Assembly (NCBI GenBank): GCA_047495785.1 | Contig: JBLDXI010000024.1 | Coordinates: 1,302,001-1,366,000, forward strand | Reading direction: 5' to 3' | DNA from: Lepidodermella squamata | Taxonomy: Eukaryota > Animalia > Gastrotricha | Length of the DNA: 64,000 nucleotides | The notes under the pieces: model-generated | Database searches by the model: none | What the model was told of the DNA's origin: nothing | Seen by the model: the letters and a program-made list of their open reading frames with translations, nothing else | Translations under genes and position numbers: made by a program | Part shown: piece after piece, positions 791 to 28,379 of the stretch | Layout: every line of letters starts with the position of its first letter | Position numbering within the stretch: position 1 is the stretch's first letter

Positions 791-1074
791 CCAGAAAAAA
801 ATGTATTTGTATCGTGGAAAAATCTGAAGTAAAACGTTTTCGTGCCTCGTGCTTATTGAGACCTATTTTGTCTAAAAATAACGTTGTATTTTGTTTTTAA
901 TTTTGGAATTTTCCAGAAAAATTGAGTGTGCAATGAGGACCAAATTAATATAAAGGGTTCCAGCTTCCAGCGCTAAATTCTCCTAAAATCTGAGTATTTT
1001 TTAGTTTATAGTCTATCCTAGAATCCCAGCTTTTTCTTAATTCAAGTATTAATATGCGAGTTATTCTTCAGCCT

Positions 1075-1210
1075 GTCAATCCGATATCGATTTCAAATAT
1101 CGATTTTACAAATCAATGATTTTTCCGTTATCGGAAGTCTTTGAAGCCGTTATGAAATTGTTTAGCTGAAGGTACCAGGTTGCTAAAATAAAAAATCACT
1201 CGGTCATGCA
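1075..1210 (+). repeat. Dispersed repeat family, copy 1 of 3
   Basis: gatatcgatttcaaatatcgattttacaaatcaatgattttt... matches ~30880-31035 (reverse strand) and ~40915-41050 (forward). Confidence 0.6.
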
Positions 1211-2833
1211 TCGATGAAAAATAAAGGCCCAAATCGCAAGATTAATACAGACGCTTAAATTTTAGTGATCCAAATGTGTGGACCATTTTACTACGTCTCT
1301 TGCAGAAATAATCACAAAAAGTAACTATTTTTCGAGTTTTAGCTGTGTCGGCTGTAATTTCTCTTACATGTGAAGTTGATGTAGGAACAGAAAAGTCAAA
1401 TGATTGCTCTTCCGCCCGGTAAATTCTTATCGATTATAATTTCACGCCTCAAATCGAACGGCGGCGTTTTTTTCAACTCTAGCCTATAAAAGCGGCCAAT
1501 CTTCATCAAGTGCAAGAGGAAATAGCCGCTTTTTCGCCCTCGTTGCTCAAATCGTAAAAATCATCGCTCAGAGCAGCATAGCACATCGGGCGAAAAAAAG
1601 TGGGGCCATTTTTCTTCATAATACACTTACTTATCGCGCGCTTTTTTATGCCCTGTCCAACAAGCAGTCAGTTCCAGGTGGAGAAGTTTTATTTATACCT
1701 AGCAGCTATTCATCTTGAAGGAAAAAAACCGCAAAAAATCGTGCATTTTATGCATAACGATTATTATGATTTTGCGCGATATAGCATCAACAAAATTATC
1801 GCACCAATGTTACAAATCTTGTTATACTTCATAGATTAGCGCAATTTGTGGCAAACATCCTGATGGCATTGCGACTTGGAATTTTCGAGTCATATCGTCG
1901 TTTTATTGAGTGTATTTTCGCGATTTTTTCGGCATGAACTCATTAGGGCTAAGATTTTTTTTCACGCCCAGACGATTGAATTATCTGTTCAAAAGTGCCG
2001 GCTCAGTTCAATGTGACCTATCATTAAATGTCTGTATTATTTTAACTGTAATTCCTCGACGCCATAGCCGGCGCCTTTTATCCTCGTTAACTCGCCAGTA
2101 TAGCTTATTAGCATTGCGATTATAGGCGGGTAAAAAAACCTACTACTTCACGCGCATTTTCGCAGTACAAACTCGTTGTGAAGAAGAGCAGACGCGCGTT
2201 CGATGTTCTTCATCAATCAGCCAGATTGCGCTGGAAATTGGAAAAAATATTGTCTAGACCGGTTATTTTTCCAGTTATCCATACTTGGGATTTTCCGCAA
2301 ATTTTAACTTTCAGGCTAATTTCGGTTATTTAAAAAAAGCCCCGTGGATTATCTTATTTAACAAAAAAGCAGTCCTAATCAATTATCCAAGCTTAAATAT
2401 TATAGAAAATCGCTGGCGGCGCCGAAAAAAGTCGGATTTATGATTGTTTATTTTTAGCTTTAAGGTGACAAGTAATTGATGAGATTTGCGCGCTTATATT
2501 ATTATATGAATGAAAGGCTAAAAACAAATATTTTCTACTTGTCATCTGTCACCTTCGAAGTGAAACCTGATTTTTTTTCCGCGCTGCGGTATGTATTCCT
2601 CTTATATCAAGCGTTACGGGCGGTTGAATTCATTAGTTGTGTACTGGATTTGGTAGAAAAAAACATTGCGTCCGATTTATTTTCATTTGGTTCCGTATAC
2701 AAATGGTATAGCCATTCAGGATTGTTTTGTTCATGTACCAAAAATTAGCTTCTCTTTATGAAACTTTTGTTTAAGTATGTGTTTTCCAATTTCAGACAAA
2801 CATTTTCAGCAATACGTTTTTAATTTCGAAGCG

Positions 2834-5248
2834 ATGGTTCTCGAGAGCCCGTTTTGGGCTATGGCTTTCCTCAGTTGCGCCTTATTTCTCGGCGTATATG
2901 GCCAAATCCCAAACAGTAAATTCTATAAAGGTTATTCTAAATTATTCTATTTCTGATTATTACCAGAAATTGTTACCGAGCTGGAAATAATGGAATTTGA
3001 CCCCGCTCTCGGCGAGAAGGTTCATTTCGCTGCTCGTTAAAATTCGCTAATTTTGATAATTTTTCAGCTCAACACAGCTTATTGGCAAAAGCAGAGCATG
3101 AACACGTTGCGAAACCGGTTGGAAGCCCTTAAGAAGTCTGGATTTCCGTCCGCAAATCGACCGAAGCGAGCCAAAAATATAATCCTATTTGTGGGGGATG
3201 GGCTCGGAGTTAGTGGCGTGACTGCGACTCGAAAATTCAAGGAAACCTACAGCAAATTGCCTTTCTACGAAAATAAACTCATATGGGATTCATTTCCATT
3301 TTCCGGATTCTCAAAAGTATTTTCCAGATTTTTCCCAAAATTCGAAAAATAATTTCCTATTTGTTATAGACGTATGAGCTGGACAATGTTATTGCTGGTA
3401 ATTTGGCTATAAAATCATCCCTAAAATTTAAAATAATTATTTAACATTTTACAGATAGCGCTGGAACAGCAACTGCTTATTTAGGAGGAGTCAAAACTCG
3501 AATGGGATTTATTGGAGTGGACGGAAGCGCCGATATGACTTGTGGTAAAGTTCATAAAAAAAATTGAATTAAAAAATTACCTAATATGTTGAAGCATCGA
3601 AAAAGGGCTACTTGGAATCGATCGCTTCATGGGCTGATAGAGCAGGGAAAGCTAGCGGCCTGGTCACGACTACAACAATCACTCATGCATCACCCTCACC
3701 TCTTTACGCTCACCTTCCAGCTCCATTGCGCCCATTTGAGTACAGCGCAGATAAGGTGAGAACTAGTCCCAATAAATATTTTATTATTAGCGGGTTTTTT
3801 CTTACGAAATAGTTTCAATTTCCCAAAACCCACCCGGCGTGTGAAGATATTGCAAAGCAATTCGTTAAAAATGGCCAGCATTTGAAAGGTTTGAAGTAAT
3901 AATTCATGTTGGATTCATTTTTAAATCGAAATTTTTCCTCAGTCGCATTTGGAGGTGGCCGGGCTTACTTTCACCCGACCTCAGAGACTGTTCAACCTGA
4001 TGGGAAACCCGGACTTCGCAATGACGGCCGTAATTTGATTAAGGTAAAATCGGCTTTCAAATTTTTCAGAAAGTTCCTATTCCTTGAATTTTTATAGGAA
4101 TGGGCTGAGGATAGATCTAAGGGTGGCACTCGCCGTACCAAATACATGACAACGCGCGAAGATTTGAAAAATCTCGACTCTAAATCGGCCGATTATTTTC
4201 TCGGCCTTTTCCACTACGACCACATGACTTTCATGGACGACAATCCGCCGGCTCATGAGCCATCTCTTAGCGAAATGACGGCTGGAGCAATTAAAATCCT
4301 CAAGGAAAATGAAAATGGCTTTTTCCTATTTGTCGAAGGTATTTTTCAGAATTTCTCAAAAATTAAAATAAATTGCTATATTTCAGGAGGACGAATTGAT
4401 CACGGCCACCACAATGGCGTTGCCCGGTAACATTTTAACAAAAATCACTAATTTTTCAATTTTTTTTAATTACAAGATACGCTCTGGTTGAAGGCATTGA
4501 ATTTGACAAATCTATCCAAACTGCATTGGACATGACTGACCCTAGTGAAACCCTTATTATTGTAACAGCCGACCATTCACACACCTTATCAATGGGCGGC
4601 TACCTGCCCCACAATAGCAGCATTTTAGGTAAGATTTTTCAATTTTTTATTCATTTTTTAGCGCAGCTCGGATTTTTCAGGTCTCAGTGTCAGCCTTGGT
4701 CTTGATCGGAAGACCTTTACCTCCCTCATGTATGCAAATGGCCCCGGTGCTAATCTAACCGGGCCTGAGGGGCCTTACACGGGTTCCCGACGAAATGATA
4801 CGTTGGAAAGGGTCATGGAACGAGGCTTCAAACAGCAAGCCATTGGTATAATTCTAAAAATTCCTGATTTTATTCTTCGAATTTTGTTTCACCCAGTTCC
4901 GTTGAGAATGGAAGGCCATGGTGGTGAGGATGTCCCAGTTTATGCCCACGGCATTTACTCGGAACTTTTCTCCGGTGTTTTCGAACAAAACTACATTCCG
5001 TAAATTTTTATTTCATTTATTAATTAATTTTAAGGAAACTTGGTTTTTTATTATTAAGGTGGGCAATGGCCTGTGCCGCCGGCATTCACTACGGCCCAAC
5101 TGGTACGATTGTGCCTGAAATGGAAGAGCTATGCCCGAGACCGTTTTTCGGCGCTCCCTACGGTATCAACAGCGCTTCCAGTCCGAATCTCGCGGCGACC
5201 AGTATTGCCGCCGTTATTTTTATATCCACCTTGACGGTGTTTCTATAA
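2834..5248 (+). CDS. Alkaline phosphatase, secreted/GPI-anchored, about 14 exons
   Basis: Signal peptide MVLESPFWAMAFLSCALFLGVYG; motifs NIILFVGDGLG, DSAGTATAY, THASP, FVEGGRIDHGHH, TADHSH, HGGEDVPVYA; hydrophobic C-terminus NSASSPNLAATSIAAVIFISTLTVFL; ~50 nt GT-AG introns. Confidence 0.93.
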
Positions 5249-6340
5249 AGCATAAAACCAACACAACTCATTGCGATTGAAAAAATCGGCAGAAATTATG
5301 AAAAAAATGACCTGATTATCTCGTTTTAGCTCATACCCGGTTTATTTTTGAAACTAGTCATTTTTTGTTACCCTTTATTATCCGTGAAAACACTGCCAGT
5401 AATTTTAGAGAAATTGTTTGTTATCCTGATTTCGAAATAAAAAAAAATAATGCCACAGTGGCCTATTTTAGGGGAGTAATTTGCGCGTGACCTAGCGGGT
5501 GAACTGTTGCTCAGTTCCGGTTAGCGAGGGTAAAATTAAGGTTACTCGCGGTGGCTGTATTTACCCAGCAGGACAGTCAATCCACTCACACCCGAGTGAG
5601 CTCGCGCGCGCGCGCAGTAAATACTCCAGGGTGACACAAAAATCTCGCCTTTTGTTGCCGACGAGTTGAAACAACAAGCTGCTCGCGAGGCGGAGATGGT
5701 TGAAATCAAACCAAATATACTATACCTACGCTCAGCCAAGGTTAATCGAGTACACAACGGCTATTACTATAATATTTTTAAGGTGGCTGTTATAATAATC
5801 ACAACACGCGATGATAATGAGAAAATGGCGACGTGGAAATCTCAAGAAGAATCGACTACTGCCGCGTATAATGTATGATGGAATGCTATAGCAGCGTCAT
5901 CATCAGCAGCGCCACCAGCAGCTGCCGCTAACAGTAGAATATCACCGACCCAAAACACACACACACACTCACAGGTAATATGGCAAAATATGTGCGCGCA
6001 CAGCCTGGTTTTGTTCTGTGCGCTGTTCGGTAAACATTATTGAGGCGAATTTCGTAACGGCGAACAGTTATACACGTAGCATGGCACATCGTGGTCGAGG
6101 TTCGCACGTTAAAGACAACACAACACAAGAAACACATGGCCTTGATAATATAATATCGCCCAATGAATTCTTATTGCAATTTTGTATTTCTCGTAGCGCT
6201 ACCTTAAAATTTAGGACAATTTTTCTCTATTTTTTACAATTTAAAGTGTGACATCTCTTTCGCATGTGTGACCTTGTTTTTGATGTCTCTATATAGAATT
6301 TAATTTATTTTTGAATATTATTGCTATGCTGAGCGAATGA

Positions 6341-18345: not shown

Positions 18346-20736
18346 CTAAGCTAATGTTGATCTAGGCTTCAACTTATTTCCAAGTTCATCTGCTTTCAAA
18401 TTAAATGCCGCCTCTTGGATTTCGTCCACTTTCAAAACTCGGGGCAAGTACGTAAACAAGGCATTAGACCCTGCAAAGCTCAGAAGAGCCCATGCCACAG
18501 CTATTTGTTGAGATGACGTATTACTCAGTGATAATAGGATTAGGAAACAAGCCGAAATAACTGCGAATGCATTGACTGCACTCAGAAGGAGAAAGTTAAT
18601 TTCGCGTATTGATTTCGCTGCTCCAGAACTTTTCAGTTCAAAGCCGAAAATGCAGGATATTGCCAACAGGAGGCAGTGAACCCCTACAAAACAAAACTGC
18701 CAAATTGTTTGGTAATCCGAATAACAAGATTGACTGCTGTATTCGACAAAGACATCCGCTTCAAAATCGTATATTTGCTTATTGAATATTTCATAGCATC
18801 GGATAGGATGAATCGTTAGCCAACAAGTCAGCATAAGGATATTGACCAATAAAATGAGCATTTTCATTTTTGTCTTTCCGTCACCCCCTATTTTAACTTG
18901 GAAATTATAATTTCTAACCGTGTTGGTAGATCGCGCAGATGTGTTAGTCACCCCAATACTGGATTTGTGTCTTCGCCATGAGCTCCTTAGTCTGAAATGA
19001 TCAGATGAGCACAATTTCGTATGAATGATTTTAGAAAAAATCGCTGAATTGACGATAGATAACCCAGTGACTAAGAATGCCACCCTAGCATGCCAGAGCT
19101 TGGCCTCAAGTTGCAGACTTTCCGAATCTGCGGTTAAAAGAACAGCCGATATAGAGCAAACCAAGCAACCAGCGTTACTGTATATGTTTGAATGCTTGAG
19201 ATCTCCAGGCTGGGAAGATTTAGCTATTTTAACTGACGAAAATATGAGAAAACCTGATAGAAGGCAAGCAGCAACTATAGATGCGGCAAAAACACTTTCT
19301 TGAACGGCTTCTCTTATAACAACATGTTCGGAAGAATCCTTGGGTGGTTCTTTATCTGGAGTTTGCCATGGAATTGGCGTCAGAAGATTGATGACAAAAT
19401 CATCATTATTCTGTCCAGTTGTATTCATAACTTGTTGGACAATCCCAATCAGCGCCATCGAACCGCTCGATAACCAATAAGAGATAGTGACCAGATCGGT
19501 GGCGAACTCTCCCGTTGAAGTGTACTTGTGTCTACCAACACGTAGCCCTTCAAAATCCAGGGCTATCGCGGAGTCATTGACGATCCCGCTTACGAAACGA
19601 GACATGCTAGAAGATTCGTGAAAGCTCAGGAGACTCTGCTTCATCCTTCGTAGGAGCTTATCTGCCGAATCAAGAGTTAGGATAGCCGCCAAGGTAGTGT
19701 CATGGCACTGATACCGGTATTGATAGTCATCGCCACGAGATCTATTTGTCCTCGCGTCAATCATCGCTTCAAATTGAGCAGCGCTGTAGCCCAAGTGACT
19801 TGGTCGATTCATATCCATTGGAGTTTGAATATTCGTAACCATAATCGTGATTCTGTACTGCTCAAGCACCATTGACTTGGTGCAGCCTGGACTATTTGTT
19901 ATATTGTTCGGAATCGACGAAGGGTCTGGTACACCTGGGGTTTGCATTATGAATGCGTACCTAGGACCAGTCATTCCAACCTCATAAGTTAGGCAGAAGA
20001 ATCGCCTAGCTAGTAGAACTTGGGTGTTCCAAAAGAAGACGATCCTTACGTCGAGTTTCTTCATGGTATAGATAAGACTCGGGTCATCCAGTGTTTGTAC
20101 ACCGTCGTAGAGAATTACGGTTACATTGTTCTCATGAGCGACTCTGTTTAGCATCTCAGCAGCTTCCATCGTACTGCTGCTACCAAGAAAAGCGATGATT
20201 GCGATCTTTTTCCACCTACCAAGTTTCCTCGCGATTTGAAGCATCGAGTGCGATACGATGAAGTTGACAGCCCGGGTTAAGTACAGATTTTTGTAACGAG
20301 TCCGGTCAATCAACATGCCACCAGCGCCTGAGATGGAAAACGCGACTAGGTCCATGTGGTGAAGGGCTGGACCTAACGCCTTACAGCCACTGGAGTAGTA
20401 ACCAGTGATCACAACAGGCGATAACTTCCTATTTCGGAACATCGTGACTGTATTTGATACTGATCTCAAACCGTCAGTGCCTTCGTCAGCAATGACAAGG
20501 TTCAAACGGTAGTCAGGTAGAATGTCGCTTCTGTTATTGATGTGATCGACGACTATTTCCGATGCAACTCGGCACTCGTAGCCGTTTCTTGGTGGGTTGC
20601 CTGTCAGGGGCAACAATTCAAGAATGTCTAAATCATGTTTCATAGATCTTGTTGATTGCAAGATGTAGGCAAGTGATATTAAGAAAACGATATGCATTTT
20701 TCTGAGTTCAAACTGTGACTTGCTATCTATTACCAT
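18346..20736 (-). CDS. Class C GPCR, GABA-B receptor-like, intronless
   Basis: 796 aa ORF: signal peptide, Venus flytrap domain (HINNRSDILPDYRLNL...D), no cysteine-rich linker, W.TPD..PPKD stalk, seven hydrophobic segments ending YLPRV. Confidence 0.88.
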   Translation of the reverse strand: MVIDSKSQFELRKMHIVFLISLAYILQSTRSMKHDLDILELLPLTGNPPRNGYECRVASEIVVDHINNRSDILPDYRLNLVIADEGTDGLRSVSNTVTMFRNRKLSPVVITGYYSSGCKALGPALHHMDLVAFSISGAGGMLIDRTRYKNLYLTRAVNFIVSHSMLQIARKLGRWKKIAIIAFLGSSSTMEAAEMLNRVAHENNVTVILYDGVQTLDDPSLIYTMKKLDVRIVFFWNTQVLLARRFFCLTYEVGMTGPRYAFIMQTPGVPDPSSIPNNITNSPGCTKSMVLEQYRITIMVTNIQTPMDMNRPSHLGYSAAQFEAMIDARTNRSRGDDYQYRYQCHDTTLAAILTLDSADKLLRRMKQSLLSFHESSSMSRFVSGIVNDSAIALDFEGLRVGRHKYTSTGEFATDLVTISYWLSSGSMALIGIVQQVMNTTGQNNDDFVINLLTPIPWQTPDKEPPKDSSEHVVIREAVQESVFAASIVAACLLSGFLIFSSVKIAKSSQPGDLKHSNIYSNAGCLVCSISAVLLTADSESLQLEAKLWHARVAFLVTGLSIVNSAIFSKIIHTKLCSSDHFRLRSSWRRHKSSIGVTNTSARSTNTVRNYNFQVKIGGDGKTKMKMLILLVNILMLTCWLTIHPIRCYEIFNKQIYDFEADVFVEYSSQSCYSDYQTIWQFCFVGVHCLLLAISCIFGFELKSSGAAKSIREINFLLLSAVNAFAVISACFLILLSLSNTSSQQIAVAWALLSFAGSNALFTYLPRVLKVDEIQEAAFNLKADELGNKLKPRSTLA

Positions 20737-22510
20737 GAAGCATCACTGAAAATTCAGTTGCCTTATAAAGGGACAACCTTTTAGAGCCTGCCCTAGCCAA
20801 TCCGTGGTTAAACGGATGCAAGTAAATATCTCGAAATAATCGTCTGGAAACTTGAGCTTAGCACGAACTCTTAGTTTAGATTTGTCAGTGAGATGACAAT
20901 TTTAAGACAAGAAAATCGTGCTGCACTGATAAAGGTCCGTAGGTCCGCTTTATATTGCTATTTAACGGCTGAACGTAGGATTTAATAATGTTCGACGTGT
21001 TGCTGTAATAGGTACGTCGCTGCGTGGCTTCTAAAAAAAACTTTTCGGAGATGATCTTGATGATGCGGAAACCAGTGACAAAGTGACTTCTATAGTGCAA
21101 CGGATTTCGAACTTCCCAGACATTCTCAAATTTCAAATTTGAAAAAACAACACTGACGATAAAGCTTTTCGAAAATTCAAGCAATAATAATTGGCTGGTA
21201 GGGCAGCGGTTCCCAAAACTTTCTGACTGGTACAAGTAAACAAATTCACAGCTGGAATTCAAGCATTGCTGACCTACTACTGACATGAGACGTAGGTAGG
21301 ACGCGGAAGCTTGAACCCTGCCATGCTGACTGAAGTGTTGGCGTTTGAATACGCATGAATATTCTGCATTTACAGCTTGAAAAATAAAAATGACAGGGTT
21401 TAATAATTATATTAAAATAAATAATTACTGACAATTTGTATAAAAATTAGAAAGGTCAAGTTCTAAAAGCTACAGGAAACTGTAAGGTTCCATGGTAACC
21501 AGGCTGGATCCAGGTTCCCGGAAACCGTTCAGGTCAAGATCTTGGAGGACGATGGCAAACGATGGTCTAAACTGTTGGCTGATGAACATGTTTGCATGAC
21601 ATGTTTTGGAATAAATTCCGCTTTGATTAATTGACACATGGCGTAGTTCTAGGTTTGTTACGCAATGAACCGGGAACACAGCCTAAGTAAAAAGTAATTC
21701 GTCTGCGAGTATTTTCTAGTGGCTTTTCCTCAATTGATGAGTAAATCCCCCATTGAAAGAAGGCCTGTTTTTTAAAGCGTCCCATCATTTATATCGCCCG
21801 TTTGTAGATCGGCCAAATTTTACCTGATTTCACCCCGAAGACAAGGCAATTGCAGCATAGGCGATCGGCCACCAGATTGGCCACCGGATTCTCAAATTTG
21901 ACTGGAACTAGCTGCTATTCATGCTATTACATCGCAAAAATGCAGTTATTCTTTCGGCCTTTCAATTTACTGAGGCGAGTTCCAGCTAAAATGAGCCAAA
22001 AGCTGTTCATTTGCTTGTCAAGTTCGTCGACAAAACTGGAGCATAGATCTCAATTCAGCCCAGCCTAAGGTTATTTCAATCGTTTATTTATTTTTCTCTA
22101 GTCATGCCAACTTAAACTTTTTACCTGAAACATGAAAGTTAGGCGGGAGCTTATGCCGGATTTTTCATTTCGACTTTCGATTAGCTACAGTAACTAGCTA
22201 CTAGAAAGCTGACAATTATTTCATTTATGAATAAGATTCCCGACTGCAGATTCAAGGGAAATTTCATGAATTTGCTATTTTTTCTGGGAATTTTCTGGAT
22301 AATTCGTATAATTCAAGGGATTTTATTCAGCAACGTTGATTCCCGGATCCATTTTGTCACGAGGTCAAAAAGCAACACAGATATTGGTTTTATTCAGCAA
22401 TTTTATTTAAAAAATAATTTGGATATTTGTTTCATCTCGCCCGAAGGCTCTGCCCGGTTTTTCACTTATAATGCTAAGCATTTGTTCGATTTAGCTATAT
22501 TTTATTCTAA

Positions 22511-24019
22511 ATGTTACTGACCACATTGAATTTATTCTTTGTGGCTGTCTTCCTCGGCGAGGATCCTCTCGCCTTGCTGGATTTGGGAGCTACGATTTTT
22601 AGCCTGGTTCTCATTGTCGTTTCAATTTCCCTGCTCGTCACTGGAGCTGTTCTCTTGTTTGCCTGTGTATGGATTTATTCCGGTAAAGGAGGGTGGCGAA
22701 AAGTCTTGTTATTCGCCGTTCTATGCCAGGCTGGTACGGACTTCGACTACCAGCGAAACTCCATGAGAGTTTCGGATGAGCAATACAAATGTTCGCATTC
22801 GCCGCAAATACTGTCTCATTCTTGCAGTTCGATGGATCTCGGGTAAATTAATCAAAAATTACGATATCCAACATGTTATTTTTCGATTTTTACGTGAAGC
22901 ATCGGATCTTGTGATCCATTTGCATACAGCTACTTCAAAGCGACGTTGCTTTTGCGGAGTGGCGATGTAATTTATCTGTGGAATTAAGACCATTTGAAAA
23001 AATATAATTTCACCTTGCTTAGGTTCAGTCGAACCCAGGCCCCGCGATAAAGTTCACGTCATTATCGCATGGCAAAAGCATTGCTAGTTCGAGCGGCCTA
23101 GCGTTACCCGGAAATACATCTTGGCAACAGGAGGAAACGACACCTCGTGTACCTCATACCCGAAAAATCAAGGATGATACGTTACCTGGTAAAAAAATTT
23201 TTCCTTTATGATGGTAAGATGCATCCTAATGTTATAGAAATTCCGGAAAAACGAGTTTTTGTCGAACAACCTGCTGCTGCTATCATCCTTCAACCCAATT
23301 TCGCCACCAAGAGAGCCGCAATAGCAACAGACGAAAATACTAGACTTTACGCGCCAACAGTCGCTGAATTGAGAGCGGCTGGGTAGCCTTAACAATCCAC
23401 TCCATCAGTTCGAAGGCGTACGATTTTCTCAGAGATTCAGCAATCCTAATGTTACCTCACTCCTCCACCATTAACGCGGTCACACCAGTCGATTACGAAC
23501 CCGGAATTTCGGAAAGCTGCTTGATAATGCTCGCTGAACAAATCAAATCTTCTACTAAACCTGAAAGTTATCGACTGGGCCTGATATCATTAGATGCCAT
23601 GTCAATATCAGGCGGCTTAGAGATTGTTGATAAGGGTAATACAATTGTGGGGATGTCCCTGGATGAACCTGGAACACCAGCTACGCAGTGTTTGTCCATC
23701 GTCCTGAAATTTGTCGAAAATGTTACTACTGTAAACGTCGCCAATTTTCCAATGGTTAATATGCCTGTGGACAGAATTTCTCTTTTCTTGAAAAAGACAA
23801 TCGAGAAATTGTTTCAATTGCCAACCCCAGTAATTGTTATCGCTGCGACGTGGGATGGCGCTGGAGAAAACTGGCCTGGTAAAACACTTCGGATCTGATG
23901 GTTTTCCTCATCCTTTCGCTGAAGGCGTGAAAGTTCACCTGCTATTCGACCCGCCTCACATTTTGAAAATTTGTCGAAATGCTATAATTCATAAAAAGGT
24001 AGGCTCATGGGTTTCCTGA
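22511..24019 (+). pseudogene. P-element/THAP9-like transposase pseudogene with spliced hydrophobic leader and 2A-like motif
   Basis: Core motifs ALTIHSISSKAYDFLR...LPHSSTI, LISLDAMSI, ATQCLSIVL, TWDGAGEN, FPHP, LFDPPHILKICRN; frameshifts near 23378 and 23875; 3' half absent; upstream exons 22511-22842, 22900-22966, 23023-23188 splice in frame to 23238. Confidence 0.82.
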
Positions 24020-24178
24020 ATGTCTTTCTAACGCCAATTTTTCTAGGTGATTTTTTCAAATTAATAGATTTGAAACGTAATTAAATTTAGTTAAAAGAAA
24101 AAAAAATTTAAAATTTTAAAATTTGTATACAAACATAATTAAAGCATTTATGTCGAATTTGCACTTCGACGGCCTGTA

Positions 24179-24493: not shown

Positions 24494-25805
24494 ATGGGCT
24501 TGGATGGTTTAGCTATTGGATTGAACAATAAGAATGTTTTCTACGCCGGAGAGGTCATCAACGGATTCTGCATGGCAATGGTCAGTGGTAGTCCTCAGTC
24601 AATTCCAATCATCAAGATCAGAATTCAAGGCGTGGTTAAAGTCCACTGGACCGAAGACGAGAGGCTCAGTGAGATGCAGCGAAAACACAGCATTAGTCAA
24701 TACAAAACAGTCCATTACAGTCAAGTAAGAATTCTCATGATGGCGGAGTTCGACATTCAAGTTCCTGGCGGCATGATTCCACCTGGTCAACATACATACC
24801 CTTTCTCGTTGTTGACGCCGCCAAAGTATAGGCCTATTTCAGAAATGATGTAAATTAATTAATGCTCTAGCTTTTAGTTTGCCGAGCTCCTTCGAAGGCT
24901 CACATGCCTATGTTCGATATTGGGTTCAAGCCATCGTTCCGCAAGGCTTATTTCGGTCTTTCTTCTCCCCACTAGCTACGTCACTTTCATTCATGATGGT
25001 GCAGCCAATCGATCCAAATGTTCCTCAGTACAATGTGGGTGTCACTATTTGATTGGCTTTGATGTTCTAATTTTATGGCGGAATTTTATATTAGTTTCGT
25101 GTTCGCGGGGCTGACATAAAGGAGGTTGGCTGTTTGTGTTGGGCTCAGGGCCCTCTTGTCGTCGAAGCCCAAACGGATCGAGCTGCGTTTTGCCCTTCAG
25201 AAATCGCTTACATTACGGCTTCATTTGATAACCACTCATCACGCCATGTAACGCCGTTTGTAAACCTTGTTCAAACCTCCTATTTGTTCGACGCACGTGG
25301 ACGTCGTCACAGCGACATGCGAACCTGGCGTCTCATGACAGATCAGTCGCAAGGCAACCCGTACGTTTTGATGGGTGAGAATCAGAAGATTCAATGGGCG
25401 AATCAGGCATTCCTCATTCCGAACGTGGCGCCGTCAATGTCGATTCCCGGGATTCTAAACGTGACTTACCGCATCGAGGTCGGTCTCGACATTCCGATGG
25501 CATTTAACCTCAGGGTTTATCTACCCGTTGTTATAGCCACGATGCCTTATCGAGGTGGCGACCAGAGAACTGTTATGGCGACTCAACCTGATCACAACAT
25601 AATGACAACATTCAACAGTGCTACGCCGTGGACTGGGGTTGGTCATTCGCAGTCTCAGGGTCCACCGCCTCTGCAGCCACCTCTTGAATTTGGTAATGAA
25701 GCTGCCAGACCAACAGCTCCTCCACCAACCTATTTCGAAACTGTGTTTAAAGAATCGCAACCGGCTATTGCATTCGATGACCACTTCTCGCAGGTGCAAA
25801 TGTGA
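24494..25805 (+). CDS. Alpha-arrestin copy 4, B-type, 3 exons
   Basis: Close paralog of 10466-12723; PPPTY motif. Confidence 0.9.
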
Positions 25806-27076: not shown

Positions 27077-28379
27077 ATGGTCTTGAATTCGGTTATCACC
27101 GTTCTAAACAACAGGAGCGTCTTCTATGCTGGCGAGGTGATTAATGGCGCTTGTGTAGTGACGGCAAGCGGAGACGCCCAATCCATTCCATCCATCAAAA
27201 TTCGAGTTATGGGGGTTGCGAAAGTTCGCTGGGCCCAGCAGCGCGCGAATAAGAGAGCTTTACATTTCTCAGATTTCCGGAATATCTTTTCAGCAGAGTT
27301 TGACACAGCCGTCCCTGGAGGTTTGATTCAAGCTGGCCAACATAGTTTCCCATTTTCATTTCAGACTCCAGCCAAGTAAGTTTAAAAAAATATCCCGTAC
27401 CTTCAGATGAGCTATCCTATTATGTAGTTTGCCGAGCTCTTTGGAAGGTGACCACGCTTACGTGAGGTATTGGGTTCAGCCTGTTGTCCCGCCGAACTTG
27501 TTCAAATCTTTCTTCCATCCAATGGCTATGTCGATTTTATTCACGCTTGTGCAGCCGATAGAGACAAATATTACCCAGTATAATGTAAGTCTCAATTTGT
27601 TTCTCTGCCGATAAAGATCGATAGATCTTATTTTTGTTTCGTCACAGTTTCGGGTGCATGGAACCGACTCCAAGGAGACTCAGCTCCTATGCTGCAACCT
27701 GGGTCGGCTTAGCATGGAAGCTCATATTGATCGAGCCGCCTTTTGCCCTTTGGAAACCGTGCACGTGACTGCGTCATTCGACAACCAGTCATCACGTGAA
27801 GTAAGACCATACGTCCGCCTTGTCCAATGCATTCGCATGACCGTCCCGGGTGGATATAGCCATTTAGTATCGCGGAATTGGACTCTAGCTTTAGAGAATA
27901 CCACAAACAACATGTTCCCCTATTTGCGGGAAAATGAAAAGTTCCAAATAACAAAGAAGCCATTCCTCCTACCAAACGTTGCCCCGTCCATAACGATTCC
28001 AGGACTGCTAAGTGTGGCCTATCATATCGAAGTTGGAATCTACATCTCAGGGGCCTATGATCTCAAGGTGTATCTTCCCATCGTCGTAGCGACAATGCCT
28101 TATCGTGGTGGCGAGAAGCAGGCTCCTGCTCGAGTGAGTCAACCCGATGCAACTATAATGACGACGTTCAATAGCGGTACGCCGTGGACTGGAATCGGAC
28201 ATTCGAAATCGGCCAATCGGCTCCCTTTGGAATCTCCGATTGAATTTGGCAATGAGGCAGCTAGACCAACATTTCCACCACCGGCTTGCTTCGAAAAGCC
28301 TTTACCTCGCGGTGATGACCATTTTCTGGTTATGCAGAGATTCCTAAATGGCGAGCCACAGTTGAATCATTACAGTTGA
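27077..28379 (+). CDS. Alpha-arrestin copy 5, divergent, 3 exons
   Basis: Arrestin N/C motifs and same intron positions; tail PPPACFE. Confidence 0.9.

What the first reader, a model, noticed from the sequence alone, without database searches (positions are those of the whole stretch)
22511..24019. P-element-like transposase with a membrane leader and a 2A-like StopGo motif that only exists after splicing
Seen in sequence: three canonical short introns (22843-22899, 22967-23022, 23189-23237) join one open frame: a hydrophobic leader (LGATIFSLVLIVVSISLLVTGAVLLFACVWIY), then FAYSYFKATLLLRSGD|VQSNPG-P, then a linker running toward the P/THAP9-type transposase core. The motif is cut between D and V by a phase-0 intron; unspliced RNA stops at GDVIYLWN*. 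No THAP C2CH finger is visible where one is expected. Established: D(V/I)ExNPGP drives ribosomal skipping in viruses and occurs in some non-LTR retrotransposons and invertebrate genes. Inference: a DNA transposon that makes two products (membrane peptide plus free transposase), with release gated by splicing, echoing splice-controlled Drosophila P. Caveats: E is replaced by Q (one base change, possibly decay) and this copy has two frameshifts and is 3'-truncated.
Basis: partly seen in the sequence, partly recalled or inferred. Interest (0 to 1): 0.92.

Follow-up and report, generated by a model that had tools for sequence, protein, structure and literature searches.

The report
P transposon with membrane leader and 2A
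A cut-and-paste (P-element-type) jumping gene in this small animal genome puts a greasy membrane peptide and a virus-style "ribosome-skipping" 2A site, split by an intron, in front of its transposase. Five diverged lineages of the element keep this layout, which the surveys I could read do not report for DNA transposons. The copy in this window is a broken one.

Summary
Window exons 22511-22842, 22900-22966, 23023-23188 and 23238-> join in frame through GT..AG introns of 57, 56 and 49 nt and give ...FKATLLLRSGD|VQSNPG^P.

The stretch is a copy (21284-24154) of a P-superfamily DNA transposon with 28-31-nt TIRs (CATGAGACG...) and 8-bp target duplications. Its transposase has HTH, RNase H and GTP-binding-insertion domains; a profile hits Drosophila P transposase at E 5.5e-79. 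No THAP finger was found.

A full copy on contig C66 (5.28 kb) splices to an uninterrupted 1006-aa ORF: a 139-aa hydrophobic leader ending in NPG, then an 867-aa transposase.

Seven copies in five lineages (52-99% alike) keep a hydrophobic leader, LLL(L)xxGD, an intron exactly between D and V/I, and (V/I)(E/Q)xNPGP. Three lineages have the canonical E. Leader dN/dS is 0.16.

Q is not decay. The Q lineages are the recently mobile ones: C46 and C25 are 99.9% alike with different TSDs, and the window copy is a presence/absence polymorphism.

The leader occurs only inside this element. LINEs of the same genome also carry leader+2A.

No RNA data exist, so splicing and skipping remain inferred. "Gating by splicing" has no evidence.

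The scan had already flagged the same design on other DNA of this genome.

The parts
21284..24154 (+). Truncated, internally deleted copy of the P-type transposon (2871 nt)
   Evidence: Homology to the C66 copy (98.7% / 96.5%) and the C29 copy starts at 21284 and ends at ~24142. A DNA contig of run X1 joins 21283 to 24155.
21284..21311 (+). Left terminal inverted repeat, CATGAGACGTAGGTAGGACGCGGAAGCT; the right TIR is missing in this copy
   Evidence: The same 28-31 nt lie inverted at both ends of the C66, C29, C46 and C25 copies.
21312..22510 (+). 5' subterminal / untranslated region of the element; the promoter is presumed to lie here
   Evidence: Blocks 21284-21524, 21654-21716 and 22077-22170 are conserved with the C29 copy at 75-81%. 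It holds no long ORF and no THAP. High summed contig depth over 21200-21600 suggests many short derivatives share this end.
22511..22842 (+). Exon 1: hydrophobic leader, with its strongest membrane-type segment at residues 18-59
   Evidence: ORF. The Kyte-Doolittle 19-residue maximum is 2.88. dN/dS is 0.16 against C29.
22843..22899 (+). Intron 1 (57 nt, GT..AG, phase 2)
   Evidence: The same splice in C66 is needed for the 1006-aa ORF.
22900..22966 (+). Exon 2: ...DPFAYSYFKATLLLRSGD, the N-terminal half of the 2A peptide
22967..23022 (+). Intron 2 (56 nt, GT..AG, phase 0) between D and V of the 2A motif; read-through gives VIYLWN*
   Evidence: The intron sits at the same codon boundary in 7 copies of 5 lineages. 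Lengths are 53-64 nt, none a multiple of 3, and all carry an early stop.
23023..23188 (+). Exon 3: VQSNPG^P (23023-23043), then the start of the downstream product (PAIKFTSLSHGKS...RKIKDDTLP)
23189..23237 (+). Intron 3 (49 nt, GT..AG, phase 1)
   Evidence: A read of the translated junctions places it at the same position in C46.
23238..23998 (+). Exon 4 remnant: linker, end of the HTH, N-terminal RNase H part with the first two catalytic D. Broken by a ~400-nt deletion at 23382 and a 14-nt deletion at 23871/23872
   Evidence: Pfam PF12017 and PF21787; alignment to C66.
23999..24154 (+). Start of intron 4, then the truncation point. Exon 5 (GTP-binding insertion, third catalytic residue, C-terminus), the 3' UTR and the right TIR are absent

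Best explanation
The window holds a dead copy of a ~5.3-kb P-superfamily DNA transposon. The element's single five-exon gene encodes, in one frame, a ~139-residue membrane-type leader ending in a 2A/StopGo peptide, followed by an 867-residue THAP-less P-type transposase.

Proposed mechanism:
- After splicing, the ribosome first makes the hydrophobic leader, which probably takes the nascent chain to a membrane (inferred).
- At LLLRSGD-V(E/Q)SNPG^P it skips the Gly-Pro bond, releases the leader and carries on from Pro (inferred from the motif).
- This yields a free transposase with a coiled coil, HTH, split RNase H (D-D-E) and a GTP-binding insertion, which can enter the nucleus.
- When skipping fails the transposase stays fused to the membrane leader. 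Failure should be more frequent in the Q variants, because E14Q keeps only 26-56% activity in FMDV 2A. The site would then also set how much active transposase is made.

Shown here: the element's structure, the in-frame architecture, its conservation and selection in five lineages, and the P-type identity.
Inferred: the splicing (no RNA), the skipping, and the membrane targeting.
For: P-type element:
- TIRs and 8-bp TSDs.
- PF12017, PF21787 and PF21788 score above their cut-offs.
- A family profile hits 6p5a at E 5.5e-79, and the two catalytic D and the H..K..RN motif are invariant.

Architecture:
- The C66 copy splices to a 3021-nt ORF with no stop, with NPG^P after residue 139.
- Leader, LLL(L)xxGD, intron, then (V/I)(E/Q)xNPGP are found in C24/C66, C29, C46/C25, C4 and C16. 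The intron sequences are unalignable, while the N, P and G codons differ synonymously: AAC/AAT, CCA/CCT, GGC/GGG.
- C66 against C29: leader pN 0.26 vs pS 0.69, dN/dS 0.16; 2A segment dN/dS 0.17.
- All leaders have membrane-grade hydrophobic segments, KD19 2.0-2.9.
- The leader is found only inside copies or deletion derivatives of this element.

Plausibility of skipping:
- E to Q is the one substitution reported to retain activity (PMC3708506 section 8; PMC12846837: 56% or 26%).
- Three to four leucines at -14..-11 fit the active eukaryotic class (bioRxiv 10.64898/2026.06.17.732966).
- LLLRSGDVE.NPGP also occurs in a catalogued viral StopGo site.
- The Q lineages are recently mobile.
Against: - No RNA run holds the stretch, so no splice junction is confirmed.
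- No skipping assay exists.
- A deep mutational scan found no E14 substitution above its activity threshold except E14H (bioRxiv 10.64898/2026.09.24.754024), so the Q forms may skip poorly.
- Most retrotransposon 2A-likes tested in human cells lowered protein abundance and did not skip cleanly (bioRxiv 10.64898/2026.06.17.732966).
- C66, the one intact copy of this sublineage, has no target duplication.
- The nearest relative outside this genome (51% identity, contig L051) has no leader or 2A.
Confidence: 0.6

Rival explanations
1. The 2A-like peptide works mainly as a leucine-rich 'stall helix' that lowers transposase output (the reduction class). It gives little or no clean separation, and the protein that is made stays fused to the leader and membrane-bound. 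The module would be a self-limiting brake, not a two-product device.
For: The preprint 10.64898/2026.06.17.732966 reports that 59-70% of retrotransposon-linked 2A-likes reduce protein abundance, and that 3-6 leucines upstream go with reduction. These elements have 3-4 leucines. The Q at the E position in the young lineages would weaken skipping.
Against: A transposase permanently tethered to a membrane could not reach the DNA, yet the Q lineages have transposed recently. The full NPGP core is strictly kept in all lineages, and it is needed for skipping. The assays behind this idea were done in human cells, not in the host.
Confidence: 0.22
2. Leader and transposase are two separate genes or transcripts carried by the element. 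The transposase is translated from its own start just after the motif, and the in-frame join is not used.
For: In the C29 copy an ATG lies three codons after NPGP, heading an ORF that begins MKFTSL.... The relative L051 seems to start its transposase without a leader. There is no RNA evidence for the splices.
Against: Only C29 has that ATG; C66, C24, C46, C25, C4 and C16 do not. A split 2A kept exactly in frame with both sides in five lineages, with a conserved intron phase, is not expected for unlinked genes. The exon-3 head (V/I)(E/Q)xNPGP has no function without the preceding exon.
Confidence: 0.1
3. The leader is a captured fragment of an unrelated host gene, or the motif is a chance or decaying relic in this one copy.
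For: The window copy is dead: it has two deletions and a truncation. Its motif carries Q in place of E.
Against: A leader search over the whole genome finds only copies and internally deleted derivatives of this element. Five lineages keep the module under purifying selection. The pattern occurs 11 times against 0 in the control.
Confidence: 0.03

Closest known systems
Drosophila P element / THAP9-type (P-superfamily) DNA transposons
   Same: TIRs of about 30 nt, 8-bp target duplication, multi-exon transposase gene, coiled coil + HTH + RNase H split by a GTP-binding insertion domain, and D-D-E residues. The profile match to 6p5a has E 5.5e-79. The TIR begins CATGA as in Drosophila P; that comparison is from memory, not tested.
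   Different: No THAP zinc finger. A 139-residue membrane-type leader plus 2A peptide lies in front of the transposase. There is no evidence of P-style regulated retention of an intron giving a DNA-binding repressor.
2A-like sequences at the N-terminus of ORF2p/ORF1p of non-LTR retrotransposons (Heras 2006; Odon 2013, PMC3708506)
   Same: A mobile element places D(V/I)ExNPGP with a leucine-rich upstream tract near the N-terminus of its enzyme ORF. E-position variants, including ES to QL, occur naturally. LINEs of this same genome do this too.
   Different: Here the carrier is a class II cut-and-paste transposon. The motif is split by a spliceosomal intron, which a retrotransposon could not keep through its RNA copy. 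The upstream part is a defined membrane-type leader.
Sea-urchin '2A-like signal sequences' giving dual targeting (Roulston 2016, PMC4981915)
   Same: An N-terminal hydrophobic targeting sequence is followed by StopGo. Skipping frees a cytosolic product, and failure sends the fusion to the membrane or exocytic pathway. This is the model for the proposed partitioning.
   Different: There the short 2A-like peptide is itself the signal sequence of host NLR-type proteins. Here a 139-residue leader with separate hydrophobic segments precedes the 2A, and the cargo is a transposase.
Viral 2A/StopGo peptides (FMDV F2A, T2A and others)
   Same: The core GD(V/I)ExNPG^P with upstream LL. The string LLLRSGDVE.NPGP is found in a catalogued RNA-virus site.
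   Different: This one is cellular/transposon-borne and intron-split. Q replaces E in the window copy and in two lineages.

Membership tests
P-superfamily DNA transposon | Terminal inverted repeats of about 30 nt | tested here: met
   28-31-nt TIRs are present in the C66, C29, C46 and C25 copies. The window copy keeps only the left one (21284-21311).
P-superfamily DNA transposon | 8-bp target-site duplication | tested here: met
   C46 has CAAATTTC, C25 has AAGTTAAG, and C29 has CCCAGCCC (8-9 bp). C66 has none. It cannot be tested at the truncated window copy.
P-superfamily DNA transposon | Transposase with P-type HTH, RNase H fold interrupted by a GTP-binding insertion domain, and catalytic D-D-E | tested here: met
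   PF12017, PF21787 and PF21788 score above their cut-offs. The profile matches 6p5a at E 5.5e-79. D in SLDAMSI and D in TWDGAGEN are invariant. E in QDANEMLF was read in the C66 exon 5. The window copy lacks exon 5.
P-superfamily DNA transposon | N-terminal THAP (C2CH) DNA-binding domain | tested here: not met
   There is no PF05485 hit in the C66 or C29 proteins. The whole-genome THAP HMM hits only C7:1901034, C32:448820 and C3:3630523.
2A / StopGo recoding peptide | C-terminal motif D(V/I)ExNPG^P in frame inside a longer ORF | tested here: inconclusive
   The motif is canonical in C29 (DVESNPGP) and in C4 and C16 (DVERNPGP). The window, C66 (DVQSNPGP) and C46/C25/C60 (DIQLNPGP) have Q for E. 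It is in frame after splicing.
2A / StopGo recoding peptide | Hydrophobic, leucine-rich tract about 10-14 residues before the skipped bond | tested here: met
   LLL or LLLL lies at -14/-13 to -11 in all lineages. The criterion comes from PMC12846837 and bioRxiv 10.64898/2026.06.17.732966.
2A / StopGo recoding peptide | Two separate translation products demonstrated | not testable with these tools
   This needs in-vitro translation, a reporter assay or mass spectrometry.
2A / StopGo recoding peptide | The motif exists in the mature mRNA (the splice is used) | not testable with these tools
   No RNA run holds the stretch, and the only holder is DNA-like contigs.
2A-like signal sequence / dual targeting (Roulston 2016) | The N-terminal peptide is at once signal sequence and 2A | tested here: not met
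   The hydrophobic segments (residues 1-16 and 18-59) lie about 70 residues away from the 2A at 119-139. It may work alike, but it is not the same module.
Drosophila-P-style splice control | Regulated intron retention yields a truncated DNA-binding repressor | tested here: not met
   Retention of intron 2 would end the protein at GDVIYLWN*, before any transposase residue. Regulation itself cannot be tested without RNA.

The most novel reading that the evidence does not exclude
In this animal a 'membrane leader + 2A' cassette is a general expression device of mobile elements of both classes: P-type transposons and at least two LINE families checked here, plus Helitron and Mutator according to unchecked scan notes. 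Incomplete StopGo, tuned by E/Q at the key position, would act as a rheostat that splits the enzyme between a membrane-tethered inactive pool and a free nuclear pool. In the DNA transposons the intron inside the motif would make the device exist only in spliced mRNA.
Probability: 0.25. Interest if true: 0.85.

Novelty: new variant of a known kind. Interest (0 to 1): 0.72.

Why it matters
Natural 2A/StopGo sites are known from RNA viruses, non-LTR retrotransposons and a few host gene families. The two large recent surveys I read (PMC12338488; bioRxiv 10.64898/2026.06.17.732966) and my full-text searches mention no DNA transposase.

A cut-and-paste transposon that keeps such a site across five diverged lineages would extend recoding to class II elements. 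So would the site being split by an intron and preceded by a membrane leader. This would also show that the motif can persist as ordinary spliced nuclear coding sequence.

It offers a natural E/Q series for asking whether partial skipping is used as a dosage or localisation control of a transposase. It also raises the question of what the released membrane peptide does for the element.

Finally, the family is a THAP-less branch of P transposases, so how it recognises its ends is open.

Tried and rejected
- RNA evidence: the look-up of sequencing runs gave one DNA-like run only. Laying it showed no splice joints, only a presence/absence joint.
- Relatives with the same layout elsewhere:
  - The exon-4 protein against 1.84 billion representatives gave one close fragment and distant P transposases. 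None of the best 150 carries NPGP.
  - The close fragment's contig has a related TIR but no leader or 2A.
  - The exon-5 protein in the search for homologous proteins gave nothing at E <= 1e-10. This says little because of the length window.
- Leader identity: Pfam gave nothing. The Atlas gave only generic membrane-helix fragments below 0.9.
- Single-sequence search of solved structures gave nothing; only the profile worked.
- No TIR pair was found inside the window copy, which is explained by the truncation.
- Host-gene origin of the leader is rejected. Chance is rejected.
This covers further upstream of C7, the distant P-like families, and the split sites at C1:4939549, C9:3393278, C28:109310 and C60:139270.
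- Supplementary tables of PMC12338488 are not held, and PMC5874415 is not held.
The only joined sequence made was the in-silico splice of the unaltered C66 copy.

Full report
**1. The observation**

- An ATG at 22511, directly preceded by a stop, opens a 110-codon hydrophobic exon.
- Three short GT..AG introns follow: 22843-22899, 22967-23022 and 23189-23237.
- Removing them joins this exon in frame to ...DPFAYSYFKATLLLRSGD, then VQSNPGPAIKFTS...DDTLP, then EIPEKR...
- The D|V boundary of the 2A-like motif coincides with a phase-0 intron.
- Read-through of that intron would stop after GDVIYLWN.

**2. What the stretch is**

The window is G000:C24:1302001-1366000 of a 121-Mb genome in 151 contigs. 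The stretch is repeated DNA.

Extent and ends:
- Homology to a copy on C66 (98.7% and 96.5%) and to a copy on C29 (~67-81%) starts sharply at 21284 and ends near 24142.
- The C66 copy is full length, 5.28 kb (L017 ~901-6175). Its ends are 28-31-nt inverted repeats beginning CATGAGACGTAG.
- The C46 and C25 copies are flanked by 8-bp duplications (CAAATTTC and AAGTTAAG). C29 has 8-9 bp. C66 has none.

The protein is a P-type transposase:
- PF12017 (HTH), PF21787 (RNase H N-terminal part) and PF21788 (GTP-binding insertion) score above their cut-offs.
- A profile of the family with its database relatives matches the Drosophila P transposase structure 6p5a at E 5.5e-79.
- The two catalytic aspartates and the H..K..RN motif are invariant. 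The QDxxE glutamate is present in exon 5.
- There is no THAP finger in the proteins. A THAP HMM run over the whole genome hits only three unrelated places.

**3. The full gene**

In C66 the exons are L017 2130-2461, 2519-2585, 2642-2807, 2858-4032 and 4330-5610. They join to 3021 nt, 1006 codons, with no internal stop. NPG^P follows residue 139, and the downstream product has 867 residues.

Relative to this, the window copy has:
- a ~400-nt deletion at 23382;
- a 14-nt deletion at 23871/23872;
- no sequence past the start of intron 4.

**4. Is the leader-2A part of the element?**

Yes. The same layout occurs in seven copies of five lineages. Their transposases are 52-99% identical to C66:

| Copies | Sequence around the intron |
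|---|---|
| C24 / C66 | KATLLLRSGD\|VQSNPGP |
| C29 | KATLLLRSGD\|VESNPGP |
| C46 / C25 (C60 shares the exon-3 head; its upstream was not fetched) | ISLLLLQCGD\|IQLNPGP |
| C4 | SRLLLLRSGD\|VERNPGP |
| C16 | LRLLLLRSGD\|VERNPGP |

- In all seven copies examined an intron lies exactly between D and V/I.
- The introns are 53-64 nt, never a multiple of three. Each has an early in-frame stop, and their sequences are unalignable between lineages.
- The codons for N, P and G differ synonymously between lineages.
- Upstream, every lineage has a membrane-grade hydrophobic exon, with a Kyte-Doolittle 19-residue maximum of 2.0-2.9.
- Between C66 and C29, non-synonymous divergence of the leader is 0.26 against 0.69 synonymous. 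dN/dS is 0.16 for the leader, 0.17 for the 2A segment, 0.25 for the linker and 0.04 for the core. Synonymous sites are near saturation, so these ratios are rough.
- A search of the whole genome with the leader exon finds only copies of this element.
- The two 'leader-only' places on C73 are internally deleted derivatives, in which a leader piece is joined to the 3' end of the transposase gene.
- The genome-wide pattern for an acceptor followed by (V/I)(E/Q)xNPGP gives 11 hits against 0 in the control. The contiguous D(V/I)(E/Q)xNPGP pattern gives 13 against 0.

**5. Q in place of E**

Q is not decay of this copy.
- The intact C66 copy has it, and a second lineage (IQLNPGP) acquired it independently.
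- C46 and C25 are 99.86% identical yet sit at different sites with different duplications, so that lineage moved recently.
- The window copy itself is polymorphic. In the only run that holds it (DNA-like contigs), one contig joins 21283 to 24155 at depth 49.7. The contigs across the two element junctions have depths 48 and 51.7.
- The lengths in that record suggest that the other allele has ~398 other letters at this place. If so, a later deletion took the element's 3' half together with some flank. This is an inference from record arithmetic; I could not read those letters.

Published work on the substitution:
- E to Q is the one change at the conserved positions reported to keep recoding activity (PMC3708506, section 8).
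- The reported activity is 56% or 26% (PMC12846837, citing Donnelly 2001 and Kjaer & Belsham 2018).
- A recent deep scan found no E14 substitution above its threshold except E14H (bioRxiv 10.64898/2026.09.24.754024).

**6. How it most likely works**

- One spliced mRNA is translated from the leader ATG.
- The hydrophobic leader emerges first and probably engages a membrane.
- At NPG^P the ribosome releases the 139-residue leader and resumes at Pro.
- This gives a free transposase that carries basic, NLS-like tracts (for example RAKMRKIKSKCRKNRR).
- Unskipped chains would remain tethered to the leader. This parallels the dual targeting described for sea-urchin 2A-like signal sequences (PMC4981915).

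The upstream LLL/LLLL tract fits the leucine pattern of active eukaryotic 2A-likes (bioRxiv 10.64898/2026.06.17.732966). The string LLLRSGDVE.NPGP also occurs in a catalogued viral StopGo site.

The same preprint reports that many transposon-borne 2A-likes mostly lower protein yield. That is the main rival reading.

Splicing, skipping and targeting are inferences. No RNA run exists for this organism in the index.

**7. The 'gated by splicing' idea**

Retention of intron 2 would indeed prevent synthesis of the transposase, but so would retention of any upstream intron. The truncated product would contain no transposase part, unlike the Drosophila P repressor. I see no evidence for regulation, only for a conserved intron position.

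**8. Outside this clade and this genome**

- Other P-like families of the same genome (~30% identity) begin directly with a basic N-terminus. They show no NPGP within the 1.5 kb available.
- The nearest relative elsewhere is a 3.1-kb Logan contig at 51% identity. It starts with a related TIR and has no leader or 2A.
- None of the best 150 public relatives carries NPGP. Gene models there are fragmentary, so this is weak evidence.
- The module therefore looks like a gain within this clade.
- LINEs of this genome also have a hydrophobic leader plus a contiguous 2A. One family has C2H2 fingers and a reverse transcriptase (L054). Another has Cys-rich fingers and an APE endonuclease (L059, L062).
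- Earlier notes of this scan list the same design on other P copies, and on a Helitron and a Mutator-type element. I confirmed the count of split sites and the LINE cases, but not the Helitron or Mutator.

**9. Comparison and novelty**

The element is a member of the P superfamily by ends, target duplication and transposase domains. It fails the THAP criterion, so it is a THAP-less branch.

The peptide meets the sequence criteria of 2A/StopGo in three lineages and carries the tolerated Q in two. Activity is untested.

The literature I could search contains 2A-likes in retrotransposons and host genes, but none in a DNA transposase.

I rate it a new variant of a known kind. The window copy itself is a dead, polymorphic fragment. 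The interest lies in the family.

Noticed in passing
window 21283/24155: The element copy is a presence/absence polymorphism in the only run that holds it. One contig joins 21283 to 24155 (depth 49.7), against junction contigs at depths 48 and 51.7. Record lengths suggest about 398 other letters in the other allele, meaning a deletion took the element's 3' half plus some flank.
   Followed up: partly
window 21200-21600: Summed contig depth is 440-690 over the left TIR and subterminal region, against ~80 inside the element. Many short (MITE-like or deleted) derivatives probably share this end.
   Followed up: no
L054 (G000:C7:3989758-3992780, minus) and L055, L057, L060: A retrotransposon ORF with a hydrophobic leader, LLLMTAGDIETNPG^P, C2H2 zinc fingers and a reverse transcriptase. 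No APE domain is seen in the part available. 2A has so far been described for APE-type LINEs.
   Followed up: partly
L059 and L062 (G000:C33:2000918-2003940; C55:1992168-1995190, minus): A LINE ORF with a more than 400-residue multi-hydrophobic leader, KLLKCGDIESNPG^P, Cys-rich PHD-like fingers and an APE endonuclease.
   Followed up: partly
L053, L058, L061, L063, L064: A repeat family with a multi-pass hydrophobic segment followed by RVLLLANDVEMNPG^P. The downstream exon is short and has no Pfam match. Element type unknown.
   Followed up: no
G000:C1:4939549, C9:3393278, C28:109310: Three further intron-split (V/I)ExNPGP sites lie outside the P family found here. They could not be fetched.
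   Followed up: no
L016 2736-3695 (G000:C29): The C29 copy has about 1 kb of other, partly low-complexity DNA inserted inside its leader exon. The rest of its ORFs are open.
   Followed up: partly
L014 about 5789-6209 and L015 about 5857-6305 (G000:C73): Internally deleted derivatives of the element. A leader fragment is joined directly to the last ~170-340 nt of the transposase gene.
   Followed up: yes
window 24494-25805 and 27077-28379: Two tandem, spliced, arrestin-N-like genes with similar exon structure lie just downstream of the element. The ORF at 18346-20736 (minus strand, 796 aa, single exon) looks like a class C receptor. Both readings are by eye and were not tested.
   Followed up: no
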